Shown here: positions 43,400-60,663 of the stretch, one piece after another
How positions within the stretch are numbered: the stretch's first letter is position 1
Layout of the letters: the number at the start of each line of letters is the position of its first letter
IMG/VR virus record: IMGVR_UViG_3300005289_000016
Span: 1 to 64,000 of that record
Strand: one strand, 5' to 3'
Length of the DNA: 64,000 nucleotides
Program-made: the position numbers and the translations under genes
Notes under the pieces: model-generated
Database searches by the model: none
Seen by the model: the letters and a program-made list of their open reading frames with translations, nothing else
What the model was told of the DNA's origin: nothing

Positions 43400-44389
43400 A
43401 TGAGTCACGGTCTCTCTTCTCGTCCAGTCGGCACCATGCGTATCTACGGCTGTGGTGGCGGTGGTGTAAACATCGGTAAGGAATACCTCGAAGCCGGTCA
43501 CAGCGCTGACATCGCGAATATCGAAACCTGCTTCGTCGACACCTCCGACTCCAACCTCGAAGATCGCCTGCTCGACAAGACCTGGCTGTTCGACGGCCTC
43601 GACGGTTCTGGTGCTATCCGTCAGGAAAACGCTGACGCCATTGCCAAGGCAGTGCCGGACATCATCCGCAAGTTCCCACCTGCTGAAATGAACGTCGTGG
43701 TCTTCACCCTGGCTGGCGGTACTGGTTCGGTATCGGGTCCCCTGATCCTGAAGAAGTTGCTGGACGACGGCCACATGGCTATCGGCATCGTGGTCTGGGC
43801 TCAACAGGCCATCAAGAACGCCGAGAACACCATCGGCGGCGTGAAGACCCTGGACAACATCTCGCGTTCCTGCGGCATGCCGGGCATCATTCACCTGGGC
43901 TTCAACAAGGCAGGCGTCGTATCCGACAAGTCCGTCGACAACGAAGCTCACCTGATGATCACTGCCCTGGCTGCACTGTGCTCGCGTCGTAACCACGGCC
44001 TGGACACCGCAGACTTGAAGTCGCTGTTCAACTTCACCAAGTCGACCAAGGCTCCTGCTCAGCTGTGCCGTATCCACGTCTCCGACAACATCGAAGACTT
44101 CACCAAGCTCATGCGTTCCGGTGCTCTGGCCTCGGCGTACCTGCTGCGTGAAGCCACCGACCCGATCCCGGAAATCTTCGTACCGTACAACACCTTCGGC
44201 GTGATGCCTGCAATCGCACAAGCCAAAGGCAGTCTGTTCTTCGGTATCGAGAACGGCAGCATGGGCGAACTGCGCAAGCGCGTCTCCGAGCTGGAAACTG
44301 AAATCGCTGACCAGCAAAATGCCGCTACTGAAGCAGTGGCGTTCGCTGGCGAAAAGGACAAGCCAACGGCCTCCGGCCTGGTTTGGTAA
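43400..44389 (+). CDS. phuZ: Phage tubulin PhuZ
   Basis: YGCGGGGVNIG, FVDTS, DGSG, AGGTGS and LDTAD tubulin/FtsZ motifs; short C-terminal tail; jumbo-phage context. Confidence 0.92.
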   Translation: MSHGLSSRPVGTMRIYGCGGGGVNIGKEYLEAGHSADIANIETCFVDTSDSNLEDRLLDKTWLFDGLDGSGAIRQENADAIAKAVPDIIRKFPPAEMNVVVFTLAGGTGSVSGPLILKKLLDDGHMAIGIVVWAQQAIKNAENTIGGVKTLDNISRSCGMPGIIHLGFNKAGVVSDKSVDNEAHLMITALAALCSRRNHGLDTADLKSLFNFTKSTKAPAQLCRIHVSDNIEDFTKLMRSGALASAYLLREATDPIPEIFVPYNTFGVMPAIAQAKGSLFFGIENGSMGELRKRVSELETEIADQQNAATEAVAFAGEKDKPTASGLVW

Positions 44390-45178: not shown

Positions 45179-45484
45179 ATGCACAGACAAACCACCGTAG
45201 TAATTGGGGCAGCGGACAAAGGCAATCTGGATGAAGACTTCGGTAACATCCATGATTGGCTGCGGGATACCGACATTGAAGATTGTCGCCCGCTGTTCAA
45301 ATGTCTTGCCGACCACTATGACGACGGTCTTAAAGCGGCTGTTGTCTTGCGCCACGTGGACGGTGATGACGTGTCCCATGAGCTGGTGATCCTCCATGAC
45401 GAGCTGCTCAAACGCTACTCGTCACCGATCATCAGCGAAGAACCATCGTGGAATGAATTCCTTTACAGGGCCGGTGCCAAGTAA
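45179..45484 (+). CDS. Hypothetical protein
   Basis: GAGG RBS; operonic spacing. Confidence 0.6.
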   Translation: MHRQTTVVIGAADKGNLDEDFGNIHDWLRDTDIEDCRPLFKCLADHYDDGLKAAVVLRHVDGDDVSHELVILHDELLKRYSSPIISEEPSWNEFLYRAGAK

Positions 45485-46335
45485 TGGACTTCCACTCTAA
45501 CCTCTCTATTGGCGCTGATGGGGTCGTGCTTCGAAACAAGCACGGCCTCAGCGGCTTCTCCATCAAGGAACCTCGCACCATGAATTATCTGGAATTGGTA
45601 GAGCTGTATCGTCGTCAACTGTGGCGCGGTACATTGCGTCAAGGTATCGAATACGGCCATCGTCAGAAACGCTCGAAGGCTGAGTTCCAGCAGAAGTTGA
45701 TGAAGTACGCTCGTCGTGCTGGTCACAACTACCTGTCTGCGTTCGAAGACCGTAGTGTGCTGAAAGACCAGGACCTGCTGATCGGCTGGGCTGGCAAGAA
45801 ACTCAAGGCCAAGATGCGGGAACTGAATCGCGTGCACATCGGTCGTAAGCGTCAGAAGGTCGCGCGCAAGGTCTTCAAGGGTGACATGTTCTACTTCACC
45901 CTGCGTGATACCGTCCTGACCCGCAAGATGATGCCGGTGACTGATCTGGTAGCCGATGACTTCATGATCGGTGAGCTGGCTGAAATCATCCTGTGCCGCA
46001 ATGGCAAGCAAGGCACCATGAAGCTGCTGGACGCTGAAGGCGTGTGGCGTAACGTTCAGTGGCAAGAACAACCAAGCGTATCCGATGCCGACGTATTGCT
46101 GGCCTGGGCTCCGCTCACTGTTGTCCGCACTTGGTCAGGTAGCACTAACATCCTTCCTAGACCACTCTTCCGCGGTCCTCGTCTCCGCTCGAAGACCCCT
46201 CCCTTCTTCTGTGGAAGCAATATCCCACCTGAAGAAGATCGTGGCTTAGGGATCATCTCAGAATCCACGATCGAGAGTTCTCCGAGCCAGTTCAGCCCGA
46301 CCTACACGACTCCACCGGTTGAGAAATCCGAATGA
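45484..46335 (+). CDS. Hypothetical basic protein
   Basis: TAATG overlap; Arg/Lys-rich. Confidence 0.6.
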   Translation: MDFHSNLSIGADGVVLRNKHGLSGFSIKEPRTMNYLELVELYRRQLWRGTLRQGIEYGHRQKRSKAEFQQKLMKYARRAGHNYLSAFEDRSVLKDQDLLIGWAGKKLKAKMRELNRVHIGRKRQKVARKVFKGDMFYFTLRDTVLTRKMMPVTDLVADDFMIGELAEIILCRNGKQGTMKLLDAEGVWRNVQWQEQPSVSDADVLLAWAPLTVVRTWSGSTNILPRPLFRGPRLRSKTPPFFCGSNIPPEEDRGLGIISESTIESSPSQFSPTYTTPPVEKSE

Positions 46336-46778
46336 TCAAACTGACGACCGTCCTGCACGCAGCAGACACCACGTCGTCTTTGGCCGATCTGCTGATCCTC
46401 CTGTCCAACAGTGAGGACCAGCAGATCCATGCCTTGCTTGAGCCGTTCAACGAACTGATCTGGAAGCAAGATGGCGCTCCTTCCTGCGCCATCCTGGTCC
46501 GTAACGAGATGGAAGACGGTTCATTCAACTACAACATCGGGATGAGCTTCAAAGGCGTGGACTACATGATCCATGATTATGACCTCACCCCGAACCGTTC
46601 CGTTGAAAAGCTCAAGACGTGGTTTCCTCACATCAACCCACAATACTACCGCGAGCTCAAGCTAAAGGAAGCGAATGCTAACCTCGGTCTTGAACGAGGT
46701 GCTGAGTATTTCATCGACCTGTTCGGCGAAGGCATCAAGCCGTTACCGCCTATACCTGACCGAAGGAAAAGAAAATGA
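46332..46778 (+). CDS. Hypothetical protein
   Basis: ATGA overlap with the upstream gene. Confidence 0.6.
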   Translation: MIKLTTVLHAADTTSSLADLLILLSNSEDQQIHALLEPFNELIWKQDGAPSCAILVRNEMEDGSFNYNIGMSFKGVDYMIHDYDLTPNRSVEKLKTWFPHINPQYYRELKLKEANANLGLERGAEYFIDLFGEGIKPLPPIPDRRKRK

Positions 46779-47162: not shown

Positions 47163-47372
47163 ATGACCACCGTCTTTGAATGTGAAACCTGCGGCAACGT
47201 TGACGACATCCACGCAACCCAGCAGACCACTGTCGGCTATGAGTGCGGTCGTTGCAAGCACGGCGAATGGCACCACCAGTTCCCGGAAGAGCGCTACGAC
47301 TTCAACAAGCACGGCCCTGCCTTGAACAAGTCCGATCCGATTGGCAGCGAAGGCTGGCCGAGTCTGGGCTAA
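47163..47372 (+). CDS. Small zinc-ribbon protein
   Basis: CETC...CGRC; GGAGAG RBS. Confidence 0.65.
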   Translation: MTTVFECETCGNVDDIHATQQTTVGYECGRCKHGEWHHQFPEERYDFNKHGPALNKSDPIGSEGWPSLG

Positions 47373-47380
47373 CATTCCAA

Positions 47381-47421
47381 ATAGACGGCGGGGTCTTCCC
47401 GCCGTCTATGGGTTATTTTTT
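47381..47421 (+). terminator. Hairpin terminator
   Basis: ATAGACGGCGGGGTCTTCCCGCCGTCTAT followed by TTATTTTTT. Confidence 0.65.
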
Positions 47422-47465: not shown

Positions 47466-47810
47466 ATGAACATCAAATACAAGGGGCCTACAGCGCTCGT
47501 GTTCGATGTTTCGTCCCTAATTGGTACCCTAGATGAGGGTGGAGAGTTATCGTTGCTTGCATGGCAGTTTGTGATCGAAAGAGAGCTGGTTGAGAAAGCC
47601 GGATTGACGTTGGTCTCATCTACCCCACGGTGCAAATCGTTGGAGAAGCAGTACCGAAAGATCCACGCTCTACAGGACCGGTTTGGAATGACGTTCATCG
47701 ATCAGCTGGATAGACATGTAGTCGCGCATCTGCAAGGTTACGTGGTAGCGATCGAAATGACTAATGAGATACTGGTCATGGTCAAAAGAAAAAGACTTAG
47801 CTTGGAGTGA
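47466..47810 (+). CDS. Small-protein array member 1
   Basis: GAGGGGG RBS; 114 aa. Confidence 0.6.
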   Translation: MNIKYKGPTALVFDVSSLIGTLDEGGELSLLAWQFVIERELVEKAGLTLVSSTPRCKSLEKQYRKIHALQDRFGMTFIDQLDRHVVAHLQGYVVAIEMTNEILVMVKRKRLSLE

Positions 47811-47814
47811 AGCC

Positions 47815-48423
47815 GTGCAGAACATCTCAGTACCGATTTCCGAGGTAGTATCTTACCTCGACGATACACTGGACTTGTGGCCTCGTGGTCACAATGTGGA
47901 GAGCAGTGGTCCGGCCCGGAATGAGGCGCTGGTAAACGCAGCAGCAGCTTTCGCGAAAGCCTACATCCGCATGTCGATGAGGCATCTTCGCAGGAAGCCT
48001 GACCCGCTCGAGGAATTGGTTGTAGCACTGGGTTACCCAGTGAAAGCGATGTCTGAGGTAGATGTCGACGAACTGTGTAACGAATGTGACGAACATTACT
48101 TGGCCATCATGTTGACCATGGACCCAATGATCGACACGATCCTGCGGGCTGTTGGTAACCGTGCCGTCGAGTTCCGTCATGTCAAGTTCACCGAAGACCT
48201 GATCATTGAAGTAAAAAGTGACCAGCTCGTAGAACGGTATAAGGACTTGCTCCGTCAAGTCAAACGCATGGCCCCGCCGAAGATGGTGCAGGAAATTGAT
48301 GATCTGGATGAAGTGGCCGAGTACATCGACTACTGCATCAATGAAGTGTTCTCGAACATCAATAACCCGGTCATCAAGGACGAGGTCAAGCGGATGTACA
48401 TGGAGCAGCTCAGCCGTCAGTAA
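47815..48423 (+). CDS. Array member 2
   Basis: GGAG with GTG start (ORF track start 47764). Confidence 0.6.
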   Translation: MQNISVPISEVVSYLDDTLDLWPRGHNVESSGPARNEALVNAAAAFAKAYIRMSMRHLRRKPDPLEELVVALGYPVKAMSEVDVDELCNECDEHYLAIMLTMDPMIDTILRAVGNRAVEFRHVKFTEDLIIEVKSDQLVERYKDLLRQVKRMAPPKMVQEIDDLDEVAEYIDYCINEVFSNINNPVIKDEVKRMYMEQLSRQ

Positions 48424-48435
48424 GCAGGTGCTCAG

Positions 48436-48879
48436 ATGACAACGTTCCTAGTCTCCACTGGGGAAATCGAAACGATGTTCAGGGAGATGTTCCTTGAACA
48501 GCACGGTTCGTGCTTCTCCTCCACTGTAACCAAGGCGATGATTGCCATGGTGAACTCTTACAACCGGACTGAATCGACCTTCTTGGTCGATGATGTGATT
48601 GAGTGTGTAAAGGGCAACCTTTCAGACTACTCCCCCGTGGATGACATCATAGCTCAGTTCCTCCGGTTAGTAGAGACGGGGGTTGATCTAAAGGTGTGCA
48701 TCGTTGAGCTTGAGTACCACCCACAGGACGAAACCCTGTTTGTGACTCAGGCTCAGCGCCCGGTGCCGAAACCTACCCACCGCATAAAGGAAGACTATCA
48801 CCATGCCAAAGAGCAGGGAGATTTCTATCCTGAACGGTTACGTCGAGCGCTCGAAGAACTTATATCCTCGGGCCTATGA
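48436..48879 (+). CDS. Array member 3
   Basis: AGGTG RBS; 147 aa. Confidence 0.6.
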   Translation: MTTFLVSTGEIETMFREMFLEQHGSCFSSTVTKAMIAMVNSYNRTESTFLVDDVIECVKGNLSDYSPVDDIIAQFLRLVETGVDLKVCIVELEYHPQDETLFVTQAQRPVPKPTHRIKEDYHHAKEQGDFYPERLRRALEELISSGL

Positions 48880-49294
48880 GCCATACACGGTAAGCCGGGT
48901 GACTATTGGTGCTCCTGCCAAAGCCACCCGGTACGTATTGGTCGAGTCACCCATGGAACATGATGAGTTCAAGCGTCATTACAGACGGTTGGGCAAGATA
49001 GGCATCATGGTCCCCATGGTTGAGATGATCAACTGCGCTATCATAGCTCGCGACGTTCTCGACACCAGAGCCGGCCGTTCATGGATCAACCGGACACGCG
49101 AATCGGTGCAAGTTGCCGAACGCATGAACATCACTGCCGTCAACAAGATCATGCAGGCCTGCTTCCAAGGCTTGCTCAGGAATGCCTGCTCCGACTGCCG
49201 GGTTCTTGAATACTGTGACGGCGTAATGGTAATAGAGGTGAGACGAGTTGTCAACTGGAATAAGCTCAATCGCTTTGAACCTACCGTACAATGA
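48803..49294 (+). CDS. Array member 4
   Basis: AAGGA upstream of the ATG; start uncertain. Confidence 0.5.
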   Translation: MPKSREISILNGYVERSKNLYPRAYEPYTVSRVTIGAPAKATRYVLVESPMEHDEFKRHYRRLGKIGIMVPMVEMINCAIIARDVLDTRAGRSWINRTRESVQVAERMNITAVNKIMQACFQGLLRNACSDCRVLEYCDGVMVIEVRRVVNWNKLNRFEPTVQ

Positions 49295-49763
49295 GGCATT
49301 CGATATGCTCGGCAAGAAATTAGCCGACCACATTGGTGCCTCTGCTTTACTCTATGCCGCTATAGCGTATTTTGTCTTCGACGACTCCTTCTACTTAGAG
49401 GACATCAACGACAACAACCCAGATTTGGAAGAGGAGATGAGATGGTGGCTTGATGACATCTATTCCACCTTTTACACCCTCTTTGATAACCTCAGGACCT
49501 TTTATGAGACGACCGATAAATCTTCTGGACCAGCTCAGAATTGGCGCACTCGGAAGCCATTCAGCCTCCTCAAGGTTGTCTACTCCGAGGACGATGAAGA
49601 CCTCTACATCCAAGCCTCCAGAGACAAAGGTGATTATTACCTTGGAAACCAGTGGCGAGTTCTTACAGAATGTTGCCCGAGTCCTGGACGCTACCGGCCT
49701 AACTCTCGAGCAACTTTTCGAATACCTCTCCGTCGCCGCTGGAAGGCTCCATCGCACTTCTGA
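49248..49763 (+). CDS. Array member 5
   Basis: GAGGTG with TTG start; acidic core. Confidence 0.5.
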   Translation: MSTGISSIALNLPYNEAFDMLGKKLADHIGASALLYAAIAYFVFDDSFYLEDINDNNPDLEEEMRWWLDDIYSTFYTLFDNLRTFYETTDKSSGPAQNWRTRKPFSLLKVVYSEDDEDLYIQASRDKGDYYLGNQWRVLTECCPSPGRYRPNSRATFRIPLRRRWKAPSHF

Positions 49764-50073
49764 CATGATGATCGAGCCTATGATGAACGATCGACTTCCA
49801 GAGTCGATTCAGGCGGAGTTGTCCAGCATTCTCACTAACGTCGTCGAAGACTTGTCCCATTCAACCAGCCACTTCGTCGACCAGCTCGGCGATTTCCATT
49901 TAGTGGAGGTGCTTGATGATGATCTTGCCGTCGTTGAAATCACTCCCGCAGGAGGAGATACGATCGTTGATCCCGCTAGTGTTGTGCATCCCCGTCGAAG
50001 GAGAATGGTTGTCCGGCATAAACCGAAAACTCTTGGCGGTGACGGTGGCAGCGGTCCTGAGGGGTGTCATTAA
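49630..50073 (+). CDS. Array member 6
   Basis: GTG start (MIITLETSGEF) inferred from the N-terminal pattern shared with neighbours. Confidence 0.45.
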   Translation: MIITLETSGEFLQNVARVLDATGLTLEQLFEYLSVAAGRLHRTSDMMIEPMMNDRLPESIQAELSSILTNVVEDLSHSTSHFVDQLGDFHLVEVLDDDLAVVEITPAGGDTIVDPASVVHPRRRRMVVRHKPKTLGGDGGSGPEGCH

Positions 50074-50317
50074 GAACACCCTTTCGTTGGAATATGGTCA
50101 AGTACTCAGTTATTGGATGAGAGAGTCTGCGGTTCGGAACGTTCTTCGGGATCGACTGATGGTGGAAGTCGACGAAGCTTACGAGCTAGTCGTTCCGGTC
50201 TTCGCGGGCTTTGCAGACAAACTGAGCCGCTTCAGAACACTCGACCATTTGCTGACCGAACTGGTCATGTACAGTCCTTCTGACGGCTCAATCGTTGTGA
50301 GAATATCCAATGGCTGA
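49967..50317 (+). CDS. Array member 7
   Basis: GGAGGAG with TTG start. Confidence 0.5.
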   Translation: MIPLVLCIPVEGEWLSGINRKLLAVTVAAVLRGVIKNTLSLEYGQVLSYWMRESAVRNVLRDRLMVEVDEAYELVVPVFAGFADKLSRFRTLDHLLTELVMYSPSDGSIVVRISNG

Positions 50318-50666
50318 GCGAAACATGATCTTCAATGGAGGCGATATACATGAAGCCTTCCTAACCGATTTGTCCCAAGTCATGGACCACTCGTATGTCA
50401 TTGACGAGATGTATTCGTTCTATGCTGACTGGTGTCGCCGTGGCGAGGTAGCAGTGGACAACTACTGCAAGCCGCTGTATCCCGTTTACCCGGGATCGGC
50501 ACGTGAAGAGCAGGAAGAAGCCGAAGACAATTTCATAGCGCTGAGAAATGCTATGATCAACCTCTACTGTACGATAGACCGTGCAACTCCAGGGCTAGAC
50601 CGCCGCAGCGTCATCCATGCCGCGTACTACCCCGAGGATGAGGCCCTGATCATCGTTGTGCGTTAA
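50310..50666 (+). CDS. Array member 8
   Basis: 118 aa; 8 nt overlap with the upstream gene. Confidence 0.6.
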   Translation: MAERNMIFNGGDIHEAFLTDLSQVMDHSYVIDEMYSFYADWCRRGEVAVDNYCKPLYPVYPGSAREEQEEAEDNFIALRNAMINLYCTIDRATPGLDRRSVIHAAYYPEDEALIIVVR

Positions 50667-50675
50667 GGACCACCC

Positions 50676-50996
50676 ATGATCGTTATCAATACTTCAGAGG
50701 TTCTGGCTGACCTCCTGCCTGAGGTCCGCTACTCTCTCGACCCAGACATGCCACACGACGATGAACTGCCAGCAGCAGTGCGTCGTTACGTGAGGGACTT
50801 GATCCTTCATGCATTCTTCATCGCGCTCAGGGAAGACCTGCGCCATCATGGGGAATGGCTGGCACGAATCCGCCAAGACCGCTCGTTCAGCGCTATCTCA
50901 CACAGGCAGTGGCTGGATGTTGAGGTGGTCGACACAGAAGGGACATTCGTTTTACTCATTGAGGAACCCATGCATGATCACCGATTACAAAGGTAA
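50676..50996 (+). CDS. Array member 9
   Basis: AAGGA RBS; 106 aa. Confidence 0.6.
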   Translation: MIVINTSEVLADLLPEVRYSLDPDMPHDDELPAAVRRYVRDLILHAFFIALREDLRHHGEWLARIRQDRSFSAISHRQWLDVEVVDTEGTFVLLIEEPMHDHRLQR

Positions 50997-51366
50997 GACG
51001 GTCCGCTTCAACACCTTGGCGCCTAACGTACTGGGTGCCAATCGGGACAACGTCACCATCGTGGCCGCTGACTTGGACCTTGACACCGCCGTGCTCATCT
51101 CGGACGTCAAGGCCAAGCACAATCAGGTCAAGAACTACCTCACCAGCCTGCCTCAGTCGGCTGGTTCGTACAGTTACGTGAAGTTGCGTTATGGCAACGG
51201 CAAAGTTGAGGTCCTCGGCGTGCCTTGGATCGACATCAATAGCATCGAAGTAATCACCGACCGCAAGCTGGTGGTAACAGTTGGCAGTGTGAGTGATACT
51301 ACCGAACAACTCGTGCGGCAGGCACTACTCCAAAATGGGATCACGGATTTCAAGATCGACTACTAA
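50974..51366 (+). CDS. Conserved phiKZ gp49-like protein
   Basis: GAGGA RBS; FNTLAPNVLG...VLGVPWIDINSI; upstream of the DNA polymerase. Confidence 0.6.
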   Translation: MITDYKGKTVRFNTLAPNVLGANRDNVTIVAADLDLDTAVLISDVKAKHNQVKNYLTSLPQSAGSYSYVKLRYGNGKVEVLGVPWIDINSIEVITDRKLVVTVGSVSDTTEQLVRQALLQNGITDFKIDY

Positions 51367-51838
51367 CTGGCCTCCAAAGCCACGCAGAAGATCGACACCT
51401 TTTAAGCTGGATTACTCAGGAGGGGCAGAGAATCATCTGATCCTCCCGTATGACGGTGAGTTCTTCGCGGTGTACGGAGATTTCCTCGCCGAGGTCGACA
51501 AGGTTGCGAATCGATTCAATCTAAGCGAGGAAGAGCGCAATGGCCTGTTTTCCCTGACCAACCTCGCCACCCATATCAACATCATGGTCTTGGAAGAAAG
51601 TGGCGTCATGGAGGACACAGAGGCCTTCATGGACGACTGTGCAGCAACTCTCGATGAGAATGCAGCGGCAGCGTTCATTGAAGCTGTGTCCAATTTCCAT
51701 AACGCCGGCATCCGTCCTTATGGCTTTGAGATACTCCGTCAGTTAGAAGCGGAGGTCGAGGGGTTCATGGTAATGGAAGTGGTACCGCTGCGTGAAGAAG
51801 ACAGCATGGTCATCACTGTCGTGAATCTCAGTGAATAA
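51335..51838 (+). CDS. Array member 10 (start uncertain)
   Basis: Acidic core HLILPYDGEF...FMVMEVVPLREEDSMVITVV; followed by a terminator. Confidence 0.5.
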   Translation: MGSRISRSTTNWPPKPRRRSTPFKLDYSGGAENHLILPYDGEFFAVYGDFLAEVDKVANRFNLSEEERNGLFSLTNLATHINIMVLEESGVMEDTEAFMDDCAATLDENAAAAFIEAVSNFHNAGIRPYGFEILRQLEAEVEGFMVMEVVPLREEDSMVITVVNLSE

Positions 51839-51842
51839 AAAC

Positions 51843-51886
51843 GGAGGAGGGCTCTATTATGAGCCACTCCTCTTTCTTTTTCTTTT
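51843..51886 (+). terminator. Rho-independent terminator
   Basis: GGAGGAGGGCTC-TATTAT-GAGCCACTCCTCT followed by a T-tract. Confidence 0.6.
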
Positions 51887-51907
51887 GCCGTATCAAGGGC
51901 CCAACTG

Positions 51908-54199
51908 ATGGAAAATCCGTTTGTACTTCCGAAGGAAGCCTATACCCGTGACCTCGACTTGCTGAAGGGGTACTTTGAACAAAATACCCACTATCTGCAT
52001 CGGATGACCGGGCAGCCGGAAGACAAGTGCTTGGCGTTCCTGAAGCGTACACTCTCCCGAGGTGGGAAGTACCCGCTTCGTGATCCAAACATGCTGGTCT
52101 TGAAACAAGAATCACCGGGCAACCGGGTCAAAACTGAAATGACCCTGCTCAGCTACGTCAAAACCGTGACCGACAGCAACCGAATCATCAGTCCATCGAT
52201 GGTTTGCTACGAGAACCCGAAGGTGTTGAAGTCCCCTTCGGCCAAGTTCGTTGAATCGGGCATCGCAGGCCGTAAGAAAGCCAAGAACGAGATGTTCCTT
52301 GCTCAGGTAGCAGGGGACGAGACCCTTGAGAAGATCAAAGACGCCGAGCAGAACGCCAAGAAGATCGCGATTAACTCGCTGTCAGGTATGCACGGCTTCA
52401 CCGGCAACATCCTGTACGTGAAATCGGGTCACTCCAGCCTGACTTCCATGTGCCGTTCGGCTACCGGCTACGGTAACGCCAGTAACGAGAAGCTCTTGGC
52501 AGGGTCAAGACACTATTGGTCACCCAAGATAACGATTGCGAACATCCTCGCGCTGGTCAAGAGCCAACCGCACGAGGAATTCCGTCAGGTGATGGACGAT
52601 TGTGGCTTCGTGTACCCGTCGACTGAGCAAACCGCTGCCTGTATCAAACGTTCGACCGACCTGTACTGGCGCAATGAGGCTAACTTCCAGAAGATCGTTG
52701 ATCTGATCGAGAAGCTGACTCCGCTAGAGCGTGCAATCGTGATGTACACGGGTGACCTGTACCACATTGCCAAGCTCAACGATGGTTTTGTCCGTGGGTT
52801 CATGGACCGGATCATCAAGCATGAGCCTCGTAACGACCAGACTCAAATCGACGACCCGTTTGATGTGCTGCGCAGCAAGAAGTTCGACGACGACACCAAG
52901 ATGCTGGCTACTTACCTGAACGCCGACGTGACTCGAGGTGAAGACTTCGATTCCATGAAGGAAAAGGGCATGGTTGCGGAGCTGGCATTGGTCGCCAAGT
53001 CTTCGGCCAACATCCAGAACACCTTGCAGGATTACTTCCAGTTCATCCGGGTGTTCCTGACTCCGGTATTGCTAGCACCGACCGTAGCGAACATCAAGGG
53101 CATCCTCCGCCGCGTGGTACTGGCGTCTGACACAGACTCCACGATCTTCACCACGCAAGAATGGGTGACTTGGTACACCGGTAGCGACGTGCGTAGCCGT
53201 GAAGGTGACGGTATCTGGTACACCACGACGTACGTGGCTTGCCAGTGTATCGTGCACGTACTGGCGAAGCTCTCGGCGAACATGGGCGTGATTCAGGAAG
53301 ACCTGCACCGCCTCACCATGAAGAACGAGTACGCCTTCCCGGTCTTTACCTTGACCAGTCGGGCAAAGCACTACTACGCGTTCATGAGTGCTCGTGAAGG
53401 TCGCGTGTACCGTGACTACGAGATGGAGATCAAAGGCGTAGCCCTGCGTTCCTCCACTGTACCGGTGGCAATCATCAAGCAGGCCAAGGCGTTCATGAAG
53501 GAAGTCATGACCCGTGCGGATGAGAACCGTCAGTTCACGCTGGAAGAGCTGTACCTGCTGGTCTGGCGTTTGGAGCAAGACATCTACACCTCGATCAAGT
53601 CCGGGGAACACCGTTACCTGAAGTCAGCACAGATTCAGGAATCGTACCCGAACATGAACAAGGAAGACCCGTTCCGTGAGAAGACGAACTACCGTCACTA
53701 TCACTTCTGGGAAACCGTCTTTGCGCCGAAGTATGGCCACGTAGAGTCTCCACCGTTCTCTGTGATTAAGGTTCCTCTGGCGATCAATAACAAGACCGAC
53801 ATGCAGAGCTGGTTCACTCACGTAGACAACACTGACCCGGACATGGGCGTACGCCTGCGTGACTACTGTGCACGGGCTGGTAAGGACAAGATGGGCACGC
53901 TGATGCTGCCCCTGTCGATCCTGTCGGGCATCGGGATGCCAGATGAGGTCATGGCCATGATCGACGTCCGTCGTCTCACCTACGAGATCCTGGAGTCGTT
54001 CTACATGATCCTCGAGACGCTGGGGATCTTCCAAGTGGACAGCAACTACGTCCGCTTGATCAGCGACATCTATACCCCATCGGGCGAAGTCAACCTACAG
54101 CCCGATCCAACTGACGCTAACAGCATCATCCTCAAAATCGACGAGGGTGAGGAAGAGGAGTACGAGGAAGATGACGGAGAAGACTGGCTTGCCGACTGA
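51908..54199 (+). CDS. Family B DNA polymerase, polymerase-domain subunit (phiKZ gp50-like)
   Basis: QNAKKIAINSLSG (motif B), VVLASDTDSTIF (motif C), KHYY and EIKGV. Confidence 0.88.
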   Translation: MENPFVLPKEAYTRDLDLLKGYFEQNTHYLHRMTGQPEDKCLAFLKRTLSRGGKYPLRDPNMLVLKQESPGNRVKTEMTLLSYVKTVTDSNRIISPSMVCYENPKVLKSPSAKFVESGIAGRKKAKNEMFLAQVAGDETLEKIKDAEQNAKKIAINSLSGMHGFTGNILYVKSGHSSLTSMCRSATGYGNASNEKLLAGSRHYWSPKITIANILALVKSQPHEEFRQVMDDCGFVYPSTEQTAACIKRSTDLYWRNEANFQKIVDLIEKLTPLERAIVMYTGDLYHIAKLNDGFVRGFMDRIIKHEPRNDQTQIDDPFDVLRSKKFDDDTKMLATYLNADVTRGEDFDSMKEKGMVAELALVAKSSANIQNTLQDYFQFIRVFLTPVLLAPTVANIKGILRRVVLASDTDSTIFTTQEWVTWYTGSDVRSREGDGIWYTTTYVACQCIVHVLAKLSANMGVIQEDLHRLTMKNEYAFPVFTLTSRAKHYYAFMSAREGRVYRDYEMEIKGVALRSSTVPVAIIKQAKAFMKEVMTRADENRQFTLEELYLLVWRLEQDIYTSIKSGEHRYLKSAQIQESYPNMNKEDPFREKTNYRHYHFWETVFAPKYGHVESPPFSVIKVPLAINNKTDMQSWFTHVDNTDPDMGVRLRDYCARAGKDKMGTLMLPLSILSGIGMPDEVMAMIDVRRLTYEILESFYMILETLGIFQVDSNYVRLISDIYTPSGEVNLQPDPTDANSIILKIDEGEEEEYEEDDGEDWLAD

Positions 54200-56576: not shown

Positions 56577-58487
56577 ATGGCTGTACAAGACGACATCGAC
56601 AACACCTCCTCGAGCAACGAGCGTCCAACTCGCGAAGCTCCACGTCAAGAGCGCACCGAGCGCACTGCCCGTGAAGCCCAGCCGACTACCGCTGGCCTGC
56701 TGGACATCAACCGCCTGCTCGGCGCCCCGATGTCCCGTCGCATCAGCGGCGAAGTGCTGGTCAACGCTGTTAAGTCGGTTAAGCACTGGTTCGATCCAGA
56801 GCGTCAGGTTGCAGGCGCCGGCCTGATCGACCTGTCCAAGATCCAAGTCCTGGGTCTGGAAGCTTCCGAGCACAACGTCAGCATCTCCTCGGTGATCCTG
56901 GCTTACCCAGTAGAAGACAACGGCACCGTCAAGGTTCTGGTGTCGGCTCTGGCCCTGTCCTCGAGCATGACCGACGACGCCACCGTGCGTAACGTCGAAA
57001 TCAACCACCGCACCTACCCGCTGCCGATCATCGCTTCCGACTACATCACCGAGAGCTACCTGGCTCTGGTTGACGAAATCGCGAAGAAGGCGTTCGAAGG
57101 TCAGCGCCGTAACGTGGAAATCGTGCGTGCCGGCTGGCGCGTAGTGAGCCACAAGGTCGACTTCAGCGAACCAGAAAACACCGAAGTGCGTCAGGTCGTG
57201 TTCTACGCCCAGGCCGCTCTGGCGTCGATCTACGCGAACCTGTTCCAGCCTGACCTGTACTTCTCGCTGGACTGGCTGAGCAAGCAGTCGACTCTGGAAA
57301 TCAACGTTGACCTGTCTGGCCGTGAAGCCCAGACCGCTGACGGTCTGCCACGTCGTTCCGACCTGGCCGTTACCGTTGCCGGCATCGTGCGCAAAGGCGA
57401 CCAGAACATCCCTGTTGGCCTGGCCAACCTGGGCGGTTACGTCAGCATCATGTACACCCCGCCGGTAGAACAGGATCGTTGGTCCCGTACCCAGCGCCGT
57501 GATCAGCCGTACTTCACTCCGATGTACGTGATCAACCGCATGGACACCAATGCCAACGGTATCACCCCTGAACTGCTGCTGCTGGCTCTGGCCGGTGCGT
57601 CGGTGATCTCCAAAGACCAGGCGTGGGCTCAGACCTACCTGCCAGGCGACATCGCTCGCGGTGATGTTGACTACCGTGACGCTGGCCTGCTGAACATCCT
57701 GGGCCCGGATCAGGACAAGACTCCGGTCGAGTTCGACAACCGTGCATCGCTGGACACCCACAAGTGGGCGCAGTACTTCTTCAGCCTGGTTGACGACCAA
57801 CTGGCCTGGGCAATCGAGCTGGAAGAAGGCGGCGACAACAGCTGGATCACCTCCCTGCTGTCCGACGCTGCAACTGACGACAGCGCCAACAAGGACGCCA
57901 TCGGCCGTCTGTACGACTACGCCGACCGTCTGACCAACGGCAACTTCACCCGTCGTGCCCGTGAACTGGGCGTCGAAGTCCCGCTGCAAATGTCCGGTGC
58001 TCGTTACCTGACTGGCACCTGGATCGACGAGAAGGGCAACGAGCGCGATCTGCGTGACTGGGACCTGCTGCGCTGGATGGCCACCAACCCGAATGACGAG
58101 GGCGAATCCGCTCTGCGTTACCAGGACGTGATCGACCGCACTGACCTGGACGTTGAAATCCGCGTCAGCGAGCAGTACGACCAACTGACCGGCGCCCTCG
58201 GCGCGAGCAACGTGAAGTTCGCTCGTTACGTGGACCTGGCCTTCATCAACCCGCAGTTCATCGAAGCGCTGGCAATGGCCGTTGCTGATTGCAAAATCAA
58301 CATCGACCAGCGTTCCGCTCACTACACCTTCGGCAACCGTCGCCTGCGTGGTAACACTCGCATCCGTGACTTCGTCGGCGGTGACCTCACTCACGGCATG
58401 CTGTCTGGCCGTCGTGTGACCGGTGACGGCGCTCGTTCGCTGCGTGGCAACGTCGGTAACGGCTACGGCTTCGGCAATAGCTTCTAA
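56577..58487 (+). CDS. chmA: Chimallin, major phage nucleus shell protein
   Basis: 636 aa with extreme codon bias; GLPRRSDLAV, GYVSIMY, ITPELLLLALA, GTWIDEKGNERDLRDWD and FINPQFIEAL; directly upstream of the nvRNAP beta' gene. Confidence 0.85.
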   Translation: MAVQDDIDNTSSSNERPTREAPRQERTERTAREAQPTTAGLLDINRLLGAPMSRRISGEVLVNAVKSVKHWFDPERQVAGAGLIDLSKIQVLGLEASEHNVSISSVILAYPVEDNGTVKVLVSALALSSSMTDDATVRNVEINHRTYPLPIIASDYITESYLALVDEIAKKAFEGQRRNVEIVRAGWRVVSHKVDFSEPENTEVRQVVFYAQAALASIYANLFQPDLYFSLDWLSKQSTLEINVDLSGREAQTADGLPRRSDLAVTVAGIVRKGDQNIPVGLANLGGYVSIMYTPPVEQDRWSRTQRRDQPYFTPMYVINRMDTNANGITPELLLLALAGASVISKDQAWAQTYLPGDIARGDVDYRDAGLLNILGPDQDKTPVEFDNRASLDTHKWAQYFFSLVDDQLAWAIELEEGGDNSWITSLLSDAATDDSANKDAIGRLYDYADRLTNGNFTRRARELGVEVPLQMSGARYLTGTWIDEKGNERDLRDWDLLRWMATNPNDEGESALRYQDVIDRTDLDVEIRVSEQYDQLTGALGASNVKFARYVDLAFINPQFIEALAMAVADCKINIDQRSAHYTFGNRRLRGNTRIRDFVGGDLTHGMLSGRRVTGDGARSLRGNVGNGYGFGNSF

Positions 58488-58565: not shown

Positions 58566-60029
58566 ATGAAAAAGCGTAATGGCATTTACTTACGCGTGGT
58601 GGGTTACGACACCATGTTCATGCATCAGTCGCATCCTGCGATCCTGATGAACGACTTCAACATCGATCTTGAGGCCGACCGTCTCAAGCTGAACAACCTG
58701 ATTTATGCCAGCCTCGACGGGGACTCGCTGAACAACACGGCGAGCTGTGACTGTGGACTCATCCACGGCATGGACAATTACGGCATCCGCTGTAATGACT
58801 GTCTGAGCTTGGTAATGCCGATCACTGAGAAGCCATTGGAGACTCTCCTGTGGATCAAGTGCCCGGCAGGTATTAAGAAATTCATCAACCTTACAGTGTG
58901 GCGGATTCTCTCGAAGAACCTGACACACTCGAACTTCAATATCCTGGAGTATCTTTGTAACCCGCGCTACACGGCTGCCTCTCCCCTGGCGCCGGACAAG
59001 ATGCGCAAGCTGGATAAGCTGGAAATCCCCCGTGGCTACAACCACTTTGTTGAGAACTACGAGTCCATCCTGGTAGCGCTGTTTAAGGCTGGCTTGATTG
59101 GTCCATCGGCATCTGCCCGTAAGCGTAGAAAGATCATGCGCTTCTTGCAGGAGAACTTCGACCGGACGTTCTCGGATTACCTGCCATTCCCTACGCGTCT
59201 TGGGTTCATCAAAGAGAACTCCAACAACCGCATCACGGCCGACCCCAAGATGGTGTCTGCGGTTAACGCCGCGCACATCCTGATCGGGATCGACAACCGT
59301 GAGACTGCCGAGAACCAGCCCAAGCTGGCCCAGGCGGTCAAGGAAGGTCGCGTTGTCAGCGCACTCCAGCACTTCAACGATTACTACAAGACCTTCGAGT
59401 CTGAGGTGATCTTCAAGAAGCCTGGCGTAGCGCGGAAGCTGATCTACGGCACACGTCCGTACTTCGGCTACCGTGCGGTGATCACGTCGCGTCAGAAGCC
59501 TCACCGGCAGGACGGTATGGAGATGCCGTGGTCTGCGAGTACCTTGCTGTTTAAGGTCCACTTGCAGAACAAGCTGCTGACTCAGGGGTACATCCCCAAC
59601 GAGATGCAGGCCCTGATCTACGAGAACACTTTGCGTTGGCACCCTGAGCTGGACCGGCTGTTCAAGGAGCTACTAGCCGAAGCTCCGAACGGTACCATTC
59701 CAACCACCTTCGGTCGTAACCCAACCCTGACCCGTGGCTCTATCGGCTATAACCAGATTGACACGATCAAGTCTGACCCAACCGACAACACCATCAGCAT
59801 CTCGCCGCTCAACCTGATCGACAAGAACGCTGACTTCGATGGTGACGCACTGTGGGGCGAATTGCCGCTCGATCAGAAGAATGCGAAAGTCATGAGTCGT
59901 CTTGATCCAGTCACCGGCGTCATGGACCTCGACAAACCGTTCACGGTGTCCCGTAACACAACGCTTCCACCACCGTTGATCGCGACCATTACCAGTTGGA
60001 TCGTCGAGGGCGACCAGATTTCACGATGA
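58566..60029 (+). CDS. Non-virion RNA polymerase beta' subunit (phiKZ gp55/56.1-like), uninterrupted
   Basis: Zinc finger CDC...CNDC, KKPGVARK, RAVITS, GRNPTL and catalytic NADFDGD. Confidence 0.9.
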   Translation: MKKRNGIYLRVVGYDTMFMHQSHPAILMNDFNIDLEADRLKLNNLIYASLDGDSLNNTASCDCGLIHGMDNYGIRCNDCLSLVMPITEKPLETLLWIKCPAGIKKFINLTVWRILSKNLTHSNFNILEYLCNPRYTAASPLAPDKMRKLDKLEIPRGYNHFVENYESILVALFKAGLIGPSASARKRRKIMRFLQENFDRTFSDYLPFPTRLGFIKENSNNRITADPKMVSAVNAAHILIGIDNRETAENQPKLAQAVKEGRVVSALQHFNDYYKTFESEVIFKKPGVARKLIYGTRPYFGYRAVITSRQKPHRQDGMEMPWSASTLLFKVHLQNKLLTQGYIPNEMQALIYENTLRWHPELDRLFKELLAEAPNGTIPTTFGRNPTLTRGSIGYNQIDTIKSDPTDNTISISPLNLIDKNADFDGDALWGELPLDQKNAKVMSRLDPVTGVMDLDKPFTVSRNTTLPPPLIATITSWIVEGDQISR

Positions 60030-60039
60030 GGAGTTCACC

Positions 60040-60663
60040 ATGGCGATAGCTATCTACGCTGATGATCAGGAGTTCGGTGTCATGCACTACGGACTTCCGC
60101 GATCGGAGGACCGTGCGGCTATCCGACAGCGTATGGAAAACACTGCACGGTCATTTGGTTTGGCAGGCAGTGAAGTGTTCAACCGAGCAGTCCAACGGTT
60201 CGAGTCATTTGACTTTGATCGACTGGAACGCAAGATGGACGCATTGAAACGGAAGGTCAGCCACCTCTTTGACCGGGACGAGATCCGGCCAATGTGGAAG
60301 ATCGGCCAGTTCCAGCAGGCAGGTCCTGAGCAACAGCGTTGGCTGATGGCCAACCCGCGTGCCCAGCGTCTGTTTGAGAAGGACATGATGAATGGCTGGC
60401 GTGATTCCTTTGTCAACTACTTCCAAGGAAAGGTTGGCGAAGAGAACCCCGACTACCAGGCAGTCATGGACGGTATGGTGGTGTTTAACGAAGAAGGTGG
60501 TGCTGTGGCAACTCAGTACCTCACGATCCGTGACGCCGACAACCGTGGTCCGCTGCGCTTTGCCGAGCAAACCTTGGTGAAAGACAGCATGTGGGCCAAC
60601 TTCAACGCCTACCTCGATGAGGGCTTGGACGATCCAAGCGATTCGAACAACGGGTCGCTGTAA
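60040..60663 (+). CDS. Conserved hypothetical protein
   Basis: GAGGAG RBS; 207 aa. Confidence 0.7.
   Translation: MAIAIYADDQEFGVMHYGLPRSEDRAAIRQRMENTARSFGLAGSEVFNRAVQRFESFDFDRLERKMDALKRKVSHLFDRDEIRPMWKIGQFQQAGPEQQRWLMANPRAQRLFEKDMMNGWRDSFVNYFQGKVGEENPDYQAVMDGMVVFNEEGGAVATQYLTIRDADNRGPLRFAEQTLVKDSMWANFNAYLDEGLDDPSDSNNGSL

What the first reader, a model, noticed from the sequence alone, without database searches (positions are those of the whole stretch)
47466..51838. Tandem array of about 10 highly diverged small proteins with one shared architecture
Seen: each ~105-150 aa core starts with a hydrophobic strand plus helix (ALVFDVSSLI, QNISVPISEVV, TTFLVSTGEI, RYVLVESPME, IALNLPYNEAF, IITLETSGEF, LVLCIPVEGEW, MIFNGGDI, IVINTSEVL, HLILPYDGEF). 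Each ends in a beta-hairpin with an acidic or Gly turn (VVAIEMTNEILVMV, FRHVKFTEDLIIEV, IVELEYHPQDETLFV, RVLEYCDGVMVIEV, LLKVVYSEDDEDLYI, HLVEVLDDDLAVVEI, LVMYSPSDGSIVVRI, HAAYYPEDEALIIVV, DVEVVDTEGTFVLLI, MEVVPLREEDSMVITV). The helical middles vary, there are no DNA-level repeats, and codon bias is weak. The array sits between phuZ and the DNA polymerase/chmA block. Inference: an ancient paralog expansion forming a repertoire of adaptors (constant scaffold, variable surface) or a hetero-oligomer. From memory, and needing verification, small phiKZ genes just upstream of gp49/gp50 were implicated as cargo-specific nuclear import factors, so this may be an importin-like adaptor array for the phage nucleus.
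Basis: partly seen in the sequence, partly recalled or inferred. Interest (0 to 1): 0.8.

Follow-up and report, generated by a model that had tools for sequence, protein, structure and literature searches.

The report
Same-fold small-protein operon, jumbo phage
A nucleus-forming jumbo phage carries a conserved operon of about ten small, very diverged proteins that appear to share one fold. The operon sits where phage phiKZ keeps two of its cargo-specific nuclear-import factors, so the whole row may be a set of import adaptors, though this is untested.

Summary
The window is the first 64 kb of a 276-kb chimallivirus contig whose nearest isolate is Pseudomonas phage pPa_SNUABM_DT01. Positions 47466-51838 hold 11 co-oriented genes (O1-O11), all under purifying selection and bounded by two conserved intrinsic terminators, so they probably form one operon. 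O10 is a known domain (Pfam PF20287 SH3DP, phiKZ gp49). The other ten are ORFans.

BLAST, HMM and profile-profile searches find no significant paralogy among the ten (best pair O2~O3, 27%). The weak alignments are collinear far more often than reversed-profile controls.

O9 has no PDB fold or sequence match; O8 has no PDB sequence match. Their nearest BFVD neighbours overlap (12 shared in the two top-50 lists). Nearly all neighbours are chimallivirus ORFans, and all ten I could map lie in the same array upstream of the polymerase.

The array is collinear across clades. O2(+O3) corresponds to phiKZ gp43. O8 and O9 occupy the slots of gp47 (Imp2) and gp48 (Imp4), and their neighbours include Imp2- and Imp4-family members.

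Verdict: a real, conserved, probably single-fold array related by synteny and fold to Imp2/Imp4. An import-adaptor role is plausible but inferred.

The parts
47381..47418 (+). Intrinsic terminator (13-bp G+C-rich stem followed by a T run) between the zinc-ribbon-like gene U6 and O1. It marks the upstream edge of the transcription unit.
   Evidence: Found in the scan and seen in the sequence. Present in all 13 clade members, with different stem sequences but the same structure and T run.
47466..47810 (+). O1, 114 aa, pI 7.9. First array member.
   Evidence: ATG conserved in 12/12 relatives. Orthologues in 20 loci. Coding frame supported. hhalign 68% to family F24, which holds the same array position in a clade whose polymerase is about 40% identical.
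47815..48423 (+). O2, 202 aa, acidic. Homologue of the N-terminal half of phiKZ gp43.
   Evidence: GTG start conserved in 12/12. The merged O2 profile matches the gp43 family at hhalign 99.1%, E 4.7e-19, with gp43 residues 5-183 aligned to O2 3-181.
48436..48879 (+). O3, 147 aa, acidic. Counterpart of the C-terminal half of phiKZ gp43, with a conserved tail motif GD(F/Y)YPERLRRA.
   Evidence: hhalign 33% to gp43 residues 260-350, and 95% to family F61 in another clade. Best paralogue signal in the array is O2~O3: 27%, 102 aligned columns.
48803..49294 (+). O4, 163 aa from the conserved ATG (131 aa if GTG 48899 is used), basic with pI 9.4. Overlaps O3 by 77 nt in another frame.
   Evidence: ATG 48803 conserved in 12/12. 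Both frames show excess synonymous change in the window starting at 48841.
49248..49763 (+). O5, 171 aa. The tail after the hairpin (from about 49640) overlaps O6 and is not selected in O5's own frame.
   Evidence: TTG start conserved in 11/12. The selected frame switches at about 49621. hhalign 69% to its positional counterpart F22.
49594..50073 (+). O6, 159 aa. The start is uncertain: ATG 49504 is conserved in 12/12 and ATG 49594 in 6/12. The tail overlaps O7 by 158 nt.
   Evidence: In-register weak match to O8: 7-8%, up to 85 columns.
49916..50317 (+). O7, 133 aa.
   Evidence: A start codon aligned at 49916 in 12/12 relatives (ATG in 11), preceded by GGAGG. Its hairpin motif scores above all 101 controls.
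50310..50666 (+). O8, 118 aa, pI 4.5. Occupies the Imp2 (phiKZ gp47) slot, two genes upstream of the SH3DP gene. Folded here.
   Evidence: AlphaFold2 pLDDT 95.3, pTM 0.87, with elements E-H-H-H-H-H-E-E. BFVD neighbours are chimallivirus array proteins, including Psa21 gp042 of the Imp2 family.
50676..50996 (+). O9, 106 aa, pI 5.2. Occupies the Imp4 (phiKZ gp48) slot immediately upstream of the SH3DP gene. Folded here.
   Evidence: AlphaFold2 pLDDT 80.8. No PDB match. BFVD neighbours include the Imp4-family members 201phi2-1 gp80 and Psa21 gp044. Distant family members always lie directly upstream of SH3DP and the polymerase.
50974..51366 (+). O10, 130 aa. An SH3DP domain protein (phiKZ gp49 homologue). 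In the operon but not a member of the fold family.
   Evidence: Pfam PF20287, E 5e-23, 81 bits against a cut-off of 25. hhalign 100% to the gp49 family. Present in 77 loci.
51335..51838 (+). O11, 167 aa, pI 4.5. The fastest-evolving member. It lies between SH3DP and the polymerase and has no phiKZ counterpart.
   Evidence: ATG conserved in 12/12. 43-46% identity to the DT01 orthologue. Weak coding signal.
51843..51890 (+). Intrinsic terminator after O11, upstream of the DNA polymerase gene.
   Evidence: Conserved hairpin and T run with compensatory stem changes in all clade members.
51908..54199 (+). Context: family-B DNA polymerase (phiKZ gp50 type).
   Evidence: 82% identity to the DT01 polymerase; 304 phage records matched.
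43400..44389 (+). Context: PhuZ tubulin.
   Evidence: Pfam Tubulin and TubZ_C_2.
60040..60663 (+). Context: homologue of Imp3 (phiKZ gp59 type). It shows that core import machinery is encoded nearby.
   Evidence: BLASTP E 4e-18 to PhiPA3 gp055, which is annotated as similar to phiKZ gp059.

Best explanation
Shown: positions 47466-51838 are one terminator-bounded operon of a DT01-like chimallivirus. Ten of its eleven genes encode small, mostly acidic proteins. The two that were folded share a chimallivirus-specific architecture: an N-terminal beta-strand, then a helical region that varies in length and number of helices, then a C-terminal beta-hairpin. The eleventh gene encodes the SH3DP protein that accompanies the DNA polymerase. 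Each position in the array has its own orthologue in other chimallivirus clades, so the set is old and each member is individually maintained.

Inferred: the array is the counterpart of phiKZ gp43-gp48. O8 and O9 are the structural and positional equivalents of Imp2 and Imp4. The members act as cargo-specific adaptors that present particular proteins to the Imp1/PicA importer at the nuclear shell. In this picture the conserved strand/hairpin scaffold is the constant part and the variable helices carry the cargo-binding surface.
For: Operon: conserved terminators with compensatory stem changes lie on both sides. All frames are under purifying selection. Start codons are conserved.

Fold: the AlphaFold2 models of O8 (pLDDT 95.3) and O9 (80.8) have the same order of elements. 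Their BFVD top-50 lists share 12 targets and consist almost entirely of chimallivirus ORFans. All ten hits in genomes whose array I had annotated match an array gene exactly by length: Ea35-70 gp212 and gp215; Psa21 gp040, gp042 and gp044; Noxifer gp038 and gp039; 201phi2-1 gp80; Mortimer gp218 and gp222. O9 has no PDB relative by fold or sequence; O8 has none by sequence, and its fold was not searched against the PDB.

Synteny: the hhalign matrix has a clear diagonal. O1~F24 is 68%, O2~F6 20%, O5~F22 69%, O8~F20 69% and O9~F33 13%. The gp43 family matches O2 at 99.1% and O3 at 33%. phiKZ gp48 (Imp4) matches family F15 at 95.7%, and F15 members are among O9's best structural hits. Distant O9 relatives keep the slot directly upstream of SH3DP and the polymerase.

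Distant similarity: array families score higher against each other than against reversed profiles (Mann-Whitney p = 4.7e-4). Their alignments are in register in 12 anchor matches, with no cross matches.

Function lead: imp2 (orf47) and imp4 (orf48) are genetically defined cargo-specific import factors. Tn-seq data show 0 insertions in phiKZ 043, 047, 048 and 049. An Imp3 homologue is in the window. Imp2, Imp4 and most O proteins are acidic.
Against: No pair of array families is significantly similar by BLAST, HMM or hhalign; the best is 27%.

O9 against the Imp4 family scores 1.3%, and O8 against the Imp2 family 0.5%.

All non-orthologous Foldseek hits are weak, with E of about 0.01 or higher and TM 0.3-0.63. 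Neither model finds the other's DT01 orthologue, or any other DT01 array member, in its top 50. The direct O8-O9 TM-score is therefore unknown.

Only two of the ten members were folded. The hairpin PSSM does not transfer to phiKZ-like arrays (p = 0.74), and O1, O4, O6 and O9 are not distinctive in it.

In phiKZ, gp44, gp45 and gp46 tolerate transposon insertions, and only two array genes have an import phenotype.

Hits were mapped to genes by exact protein length, not by accession. No functional, localisation or expression data exist for this phage (one search found DNA runs only).
Confidence: 0.45

Rival explanations
1. The array encodes replisome or DNA-polymerase accessory factors. On this view the small proteins work with the SH3DP protein and the divergent family-B polymerase that are transcribed with or just after them, and are not import factors.
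For: The array is co-oriented with the polymerase and always adjacent to it. It contains the SH3DP gene, which Pfam describes as associated with phage DNA polymerases. This order is conserved in 77 loci. Tn-seq shows no insertions in phiKZ gp43, gp47, gp48, gp49 or gp50. Imp4's known cargo is a topoisomerase.
Against: A conserved terminator separates O11 from the polymerase gene. No member matches a clamp, clamp loader, primase, helicase or SSB family in Pfam or PHROGs. The two characterised homologous slots in phiKZ have import phenotypes, not replication phenotypes.
Confidence: 0.15
2. The members form a hetero-oligomeric complex. They would assemble with each other, for example by pairing of edge strands, into one multi-subunit structure of unknown role at or in the phage nucleus, and would not act as independent adaptors.
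For: The gene number and order are fixed across clades. Successive genes overlap tightly or extensively, which suits coupled, stoichiometric translation. All members share an exposed strand/hairpin element.
Against: In phiKZ three of the array genes are dispensable while their neighbours are not. imp2 and imp4 mutants have different, cargo-specific phenotypes. Some phages have fused (gp43) or duplicated (F15, F34) members, which changes stoichiometry. No multimer prediction could be run.
Confidence: 0.13
3. The array encodes host-takeover or anti-defence proteins: a cluster of small, fast-evolving proteins that each target a host factor or immune system.
For: The proteins are small, acidic ORFans that evolve faster than neighbouring core genes, at 43-73% identity to DT01 against 82% for the polymerase. 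They have no Pfam or PHROG family.
Against: Anti-defence islands vary in gene content. Here each slot has a one-to-one orthologue in clades whose polymerase is only about 40% identical. Several phiKZ counterparts tolerate no insertions.
Confidence: 0.12
4. There is no family. The ten are unrelated ORFans, and an N-terminal strand plus a C-terminal hairpin is a generic feature of small alpha/beta proteins that a reader's eye picks out.
For: All sequence tests for paralogy fall below threshold. The N-terminal motif is not distinctive, and four of ten hairpins are not either. Foldseek scores are weak. My motif anchors were chosen by eye.
Against: Twelve shared structural neighbours in a library of viral proteins, nearly all of them from the same array in other phages, cannot be chance. 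In-register alignments greatly exceed the reversed-profile control. The same pattern recurs in every member of a very distant array, L089. Some arrays contain BLAST-detectable tandem duplicates.
Confidence: 0.1

Closest known systems
phiKZ Imp4 (gp48, orf48) and its family (201phi2-1 gp80, PhiPA3 gp045, Psa21 gp044)
   Same: O9 has the same genomic slot, immediately upstream of the SH3DP/gp49 gene and the polymerase. It is similar in size and acidity. It has the same architecture of an N-terminal strand and a C-terminal hairpin, and the hairpin turn carries a D-x-x-G-T-like motif. Family members are among O9's best structural neighbours (prob 0.84-0.89, TM 0.39-0.51).
   Different: There is no detectable sequence homology (hhalign 1.3%). 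Imp4's role in TopA import is known only in phiKZ. The source paper describes Imp4 as conserved only in Pseudomonas phiKZ-like phages.
phiKZ Imp2 (gp47, orf47) family
   Same: O8 occupies the corresponding slot, two genes upstream of SH3DP. It is acidic. Its model hits Psa21 gp042, which BLAST clustering places in the Imp2 family (prob 0.77, TM 0.41/0.30).
   Different: O8 is 118 aa and Imp2 is 178 aa. Sequence homology is absent (hhalign 0.5%). Import of Nlp1, and Imp2's own import, are shown only for phiKZ and PhiPA3.
phiKZ gp43 (uncharacterised, 357 aa)
   Same: O2 is a clear homologue of its N-terminal half (99.1%). O3 is a probable homologue of its C-terminal half, including the GDY-P-R tail motif.
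   Different: The window has two separate genes where phiKZ-like phages have one fused gene. No function is known for gp43. No transposon insertions were recovered in it.
Pfam PF20287 SH3DP (phiKZ gp49)
   Same: O10 is a full-length member.
   Different: It is an SH3-like beta fold, not the array fold. It is embedded in the operon but is not part of the family.
Eukaryotic importin-alpha/karyopherin adaptors
   Same: The resemblance is only in concept: one transport machine served by several cargo-selective adaptors.
   Different: There is no structural or sequence relation. Karyopherins are large ARM/HEAT-repeat proteins that recognise linear signals. Phage-nucleus cargo is recognised through surface residues of the folded protein (PMC12908238).

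Membership tests
Imp4 (phiKZ gp48) family | Detectable sequence homology to gp48 or family F15 | tested here: not met
   O9 profiles against the Imp4 superfamily profile: hhalign 0.25-1.3%, with only the hairpins aligned. As a positive control, gp48 against F15 gives 95.7%.
Imp4 (phiKZ gp48) family | Gene immediately upstream of the SH3DP (gp49) gene and the DNA polymerase | tested here: met
   O9 ends at 50996 and O10 (SH3DP) starts at 50974. The same holds for distant O9 relatives.
Imp4 (phiKZ gp48) family | Same fold | tested here: inconclusive
   The O9 model against BFVD gives 201phi2-1 gp80 (TM 0.51/0.44, prob 0.84) and Psa21 gp044 (TM 0.44/0.39, prob 0.89). E-values are only 0.02-0.09. 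phiKZ gp48 itself could not be folded here.
Imp4 (phiKZ gp48) family | Required for import of a specific cargo (TopA) | not testable with these tools
   This is a genetic phenotype reported for phiKZ only.
Imp2 (phiKZ gp47) family | Detectable sequence homology to gp47 or family F5 | tested here: not met
   The 64-sequence O8 profile against the Imp2 family profile gives hhalign 0.46%.
Imp2 (phiKZ gp47) family | Slot two genes upstream of SH3DP, plus the same fold | tested here: inconclusive
   The slot criterion is met. The O8 model hits Psa21 gp042, an Imp2-family member by BLAST clustering, with TM 0.41/0.30 and prob 0.77.
phiKZ gp43 family | Sequence homology | tested here: met
   O2 (merged with F6) against the gp43 family: hhalign 99.1%, E 4.7e-19, 163 columns. 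O3 against the C-terminal half: 33%, E 4.5e-4.
Pfam PF20287 SH3DP | Score above the curated cut-off | tested here: met
   O10 scores 81.4 bits against a cut-off of 25.
One paralogous family comprising the ten array proteins | Significant pairwise sequence or profile similarity | tested here: not met
   BLASTP finds none. HMM searches give no cross hits. The best hhalign results are O2~O3 at 27% and O6~O8 at 7-8%.
One paralogous family comprising the ten array proteins | Collinear sub-threshold similarity above a null model | tested here: met
   In-register anchor matches: N-N 6, C-C 6, cross 0 in 45 pairs. Reversed-profile controls gave 4 in 90 pairs across 4 categories. Real scores exceed the controls, p = 4.7e-4.
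One paralogous family comprising the ten array proteins | Shared three-dimensional fold | tested here: inconclusive
   O8 and O9 have the same element order and share 12 BFVD neighbours. No direct TM-score was obtainable.
Chimalliviridae (nucleus-forming jumbo phages) | Presence of PhuZ, chimallin, the divergent polymerase and an Imp3 homologue in the conserved order | tested here: met

The most novel reading that the evidence does not exclude
The whole row of small genes between phuZ and the DNA polymerase is one ancient, chimallivirus-wide family of same-fold proteins. It forms the cargo-adaptor repertoire of the phage nucleus. Imp2 and Imp4 are merely the two members that genetic selections have found so far, and each other member licenses a different set of cargo through Imp1/PicA. 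This would turn about ten ORFans per phage into a testable map of adaptors to cargo.
Probability: 0.3. Interest if true: 0.85.

Novelty: new variant of a known kind. Interest (0 to 1): 0.68.

Why it matters
How the protein shell of the phage nucleus selects its cargo is an open question. Imp1/PicA is the central factor, and only a few cargo-specific helpers (Imp2, Imp4, Imp5, Imp7) are known. All come from phiKZ, and the source paper reports Imp2, Imp4 and Imp5 as restricted to close Pseudomonas relatives.

Suppose Imp2 and Imp4 do belong to a conserved, same-fold array present in all chimallivirus clades. The adaptor layer of the import system would then be older and larger than thought. The uncharacterised neighbours (phiKZ gp43-gp46 and their counterparts) would become obvious candidates. 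A constant scaffold with variable helices would also offer a structural handle on cargo recognition.

None of the papers I searched mentions a shared fold or common origin for these genes.

Tried and rejected
- **BLASTP and iterative HMM searches for cross-paralogue hits:** none found.
- **Pfam and PHROGs on the ten proteins:** nothing.
- **ESM Atlas look-alikes for O9 and O8:** only noise-level scores, and no models held.
- **PDB fold search for O9, and PDB sequence-profile searches for O8 and O9:** nothing.
- **Extending the O9 profile:** I used 21 representatives drawn from 1.84 billion proteins to try to reach the Imp4 family. It failed, at 1.3%. A 64-sequence O8 profile failed to reach the Imp2 family.
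- **N-terminal motif PSSM:** not distinctive.
- **Applying the window-trained hairpin PSSM to phiKZ-like arrays:** no enrichment, p = 0.74. The sequence motif is therefore clade-specific.
- **Chou-Fasman secondary structure on the alignments:** too noisy to use as evidence.
- **Search for RNA-seq runs:** only DNA metagenomes (soil, compost, rhizosphere and others) hold the region, so no reads were laid.
- **Sigma-70 promoter scan:** fewer sites than in shuffled sequence, as expected for a phage with its own RNA polymerases.
- **Structure prediction:** An all-against-all structure comparison was therefore impossible.

Full report
**Source and setting**

The window is the first 64 kb of IMG/VR contig IMGVR_UViG_3300005289_000016, which is 276 kb long. 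Its only close cultured relative is Pseudomonas phage pPa_SNUABM_DT01, with 82% amino-acid identity in the DNA polymerase. The next relatives have about 38% polymerase identity and are phiKZ-like jumbo phages of many hosts.

- PhuZ at 43400-44389 (Pfam Tubulin and TubZ_C_2).
- A family-B DNA polymerase at 51908-54199.
- Chimallin at 56577-58487 (25% identity, E 4e-23 to the PhiPA3 shell protein).

An Imp3 (phiKZ gp59-type) homologue lies at 60040-60663.

**Gene content of 47466-51838**

There are eleven + strand ORFs, which I call O1-O11. Every one has orthologues in the roughly 20 contigs of the DT01-like clade. A scan of synonymous against non-synonymous differences over 11 relatives shows the expected frame under purifying selection along the whole stretch. 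The selected frame switches at the gene borders.

Start codons are conserved in 9-12 of 12 sequences for all but O6.

Several genes overlap the next one out of frame:
- O3/O4 by 77 nt.
- O5/O6 by at least 170 nt.
- O6/O7 by 158 nt.
- O9/O10 by 23 nt.
- O10/O11 by 32 nt.

The overlapped tails of O5 and O6 are not selected in their own frame.

A strong intrinsic terminator lies just before O1 (47381-47418), and another lies just after O11 (51843-51890). Both are present in all 13 clade members, with different stem sequences but the same hairpin and T run. The eleven genes therefore look like one transcription unit. No DNA-level repeats exist.

**The odd one out**

It is a full-length PF20287 SH3DP domain protein (E 5e-23), homologous to phiKZ gp49 (hhalign 100%). 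It is present in 77 of about 80 chimallivirus loci examined.

**Is there sequence-level paralogy?**

Not by the usual standards:
- BLASTP and iterated HMM searches give no cross hits.
- All-against-all hhalign of the ortholog-family alignments gives at most 6% between array families. This is no better than control families.
- After merging each family with its counterpart from a second clade, the best pairs are O2~O3 (27%, E 7e-4, 102 columns spanning both units) and O6~O8 (7%, 85 columns).

The weak alignments are nevertheless not random. Among the top alignments of the 45 pairs, 6 superpose the N-terminal strand/helix anchors and 6 superpose the hairpin anchors. None matches an N anchor to a C anchor. 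With one profile reversed, only 4 anchor coincidences occur in 90 pairs across four categories, and the scores are lower (Mann-Whitney p = 4.7e-4).

I also built a leave-one-family-out PSSM of the hairpin. It ranks O5, O7 and O8 above all 101 control proteins. O3, O2 and O11 fall within the top 2-7%. O1, O4, O6 and O9 are not distinctive.

Two caveats apply to the PSSM. I chose its anchors by eye. It also does not carry over to phiKZ-like arrays.

**Structure**

Only two predictions were allowed.
- **O9** (23-sequence alignment): pLDDT 80.8, pTM 0.71, with elements E2-6, H8-21, H33-48, H53-66, H69-74, E81-87, E90-96.
- **O8** (64-sequence alignment, built after a profile search): pLDDT 95.3, pTM 0.87, with elements E4-9, five helices, E101-107, E112-117.

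O9 has no fold match in the PDB (best E 0.88). Neither has a sequence match there.

Against BFVD, each model finds its DT01 orthologue first (TM 0.82-0.97). After that come hits that are almost all uncharacterised proteins of chimalliviruses, with TM 0.3-0.63 and probabilities up to 1.00. These include phages Ea35-70, Psa21, 201phi2-1, Noxifer, PhiEaH1, Phabio, RSL2, RP12, RP31, Eowyn, Miami, Mortimer and Desertfox.

The two top-50 lists share 12 targets.

For the genomes whose arrays I retrieved, every hit matches an array gene exactly by length:
- Ea35-70 gp212 and gp215.
- Psa21 gp040, gp042 and gp044.
- Noxifer gp038 and gp039.
- 201phi2-1 gp80.
- Mortimer gp218 and gp222.

Several genomes contribute two to four different array genes. 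This is good evidence that O8 and O9 belong to one chimallivirus-specific fold family that fills these arrays.

Some cautions remain:
- All non-orthologous E-values are 0.01 or worse.
- Neither model lists the other's DT01 orthologue, or any other DT01 array member, in its top 50.
- A direct O8-O9 TM-score could not be computed.
- Eight members remain unfolded.

**Synteny with phiKZ**

I clustered all + strand ORFs upstream of the polymerase in 80 loci. This shows a collinear array in every clade.

Against a clade with about 40% polymerase identity, hhalign gives a clean diagonal: O1~F24 68%, O2~F6 20%, O5~F22 69%, O8~F20 69%, O9~F33 13%. Off-diagonal values are near zero. Each slot is therefore an old, separately conserved gene.

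The links to phiKZ-like phages are:
- The gp43 family matches O2 (99.1%, E 5e-19; gp43 residues 5-183) and O3 (33%; gp43 residues 260-350). phiKZ gp43 is thus a fusion of an O2-like and an O3-like unit.
- phiKZ gp48 matches family F15 (201phi2-1 gp80, PhiPA3 gp045, Psa21 gp044) at 95.7%.
- F15 occupies the slot directly upstream of SH3DP, as O9 does.
- gp47 and family F5 occupy the slot before that, as O8 does.

An HMM search of 1.84 billion representatives found only 21 O9-family clusters. The two distant ones I inspected sit directly upstream of SH3DP and the polymerase, after eight or nine small genes with no Pfam hit. By eye, every protein of one such distant array shows the same strand and hairpin pattern.

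Some arrays hold BLAST-detectable tandem duplicates: Noxifer gp037/gp038, and two F15 copies in L080 and L082. Duplication within these arrays therefore does occur.

**Function**

In phiKZ, orf47 is imp2, needed for Nlp1 import and itself imported. orf48 is imp4, needed with imp5 for TopA import. Both act together with the core factor Imp1, and later work calls them cargo-specific adaptors.

Supplementary data from a transposon screen list no insertions in PHIKZ043, 047, 048, 049 or 050. They list 6-11 insertion sites in 044, 045 and 046.

None of the papers I searched mentions a shared fold or common origin for these genes.

Sequence membership of O8 and O9 in the Imp2 and Imp4 families fails (0.5% and 1.3%). 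The relation rests on slot, size, acidity and moderate structural similarity. The import-adaptor mechanism is therefore an inference, not a result.

**Assessment**

It is directly verified for two members and indirectly supported for the rest.

I put about 0.6 on the statement that the array is one fold family including the Imp2 and Imp4 lineages. I put about 0.45 on the full statement that adds an adaptor role in nuclear import. Rivals are polymerase or replisome accessory proteins, a hetero-oligomeric complex, host-takeover proteins, and unrelated ORFans.

Noticed in passing
window 47381-47418 and 51843-51890: Two intrinsic terminators bracket the array. Both are conserved in all 13 clade members, with compensatory stem changes. 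The second has a conserved loop, CTCTATTATGAG.
   Followed up: yes
window 48803-48879, 49594-49763, 49916-50073, 50974-50996, 51335-51366: Successive array genes overlap out of frame by 23 to about 170 nt. In the long overlaps only the downstream gene's frame is under selection. The C-terminal tails of O5 and O6 therefore look like by-products of the overlap, or they may serve translational coupling.
   Followed up: partly
L014 14342-15415 (phiKZ gp43) against window 47815-48879: phiKZ gp43 (357 aa) corresponds to O2 plus O3 fused into one gene. O2 and O3 are also the best candidate paralogue pair (27%), so gp43 may be an internal tandem duplication.
   Followed up: partly
window 45179-45484 and 46332-46778: Two small genes upstream of the terminator (U2, U4) also begin with a hydrophobic strand (TTVVIGAAD and TTVLHAAD). 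U2 has a hairpin-like VVLRHVDGDD..ELVILH. hhalign U2~U4 was the top control pair at 9.9%.
   Followed up: no
window 47163-47372: A 69-aa protein with two CxxC pairs (zinc-ribbon-like) is conserved in 42 loci. It marks the upstream border of the array in several clades.
   Followed up: partly
window 60040-60663: A homologue of Imp3 (phiKZ gp59 type; E 4e-18 to PhiPA3 gp055) lies directly after the nvRNAP beta-subunit-like gene (58566-60029), as in phiKZ.
   Followed up: partly
L080 8113-9028, L082 8111-9020; L085 5733-6604: Tandem duplicates of the Imp4-family gene occur in two uncultured phiKZ-like contigs. A BLAST-detectable pair, gp037/gp038, occurs in phage Noxifer.
   Followed up: partly
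window 47466-51838: Near-identical DNA is held only by DNA metagenome runs from soil, compost, rhizosphere, wetland, freshwater sediment, an invertebrate and food. No RNA run holds it.
   Followed up: no
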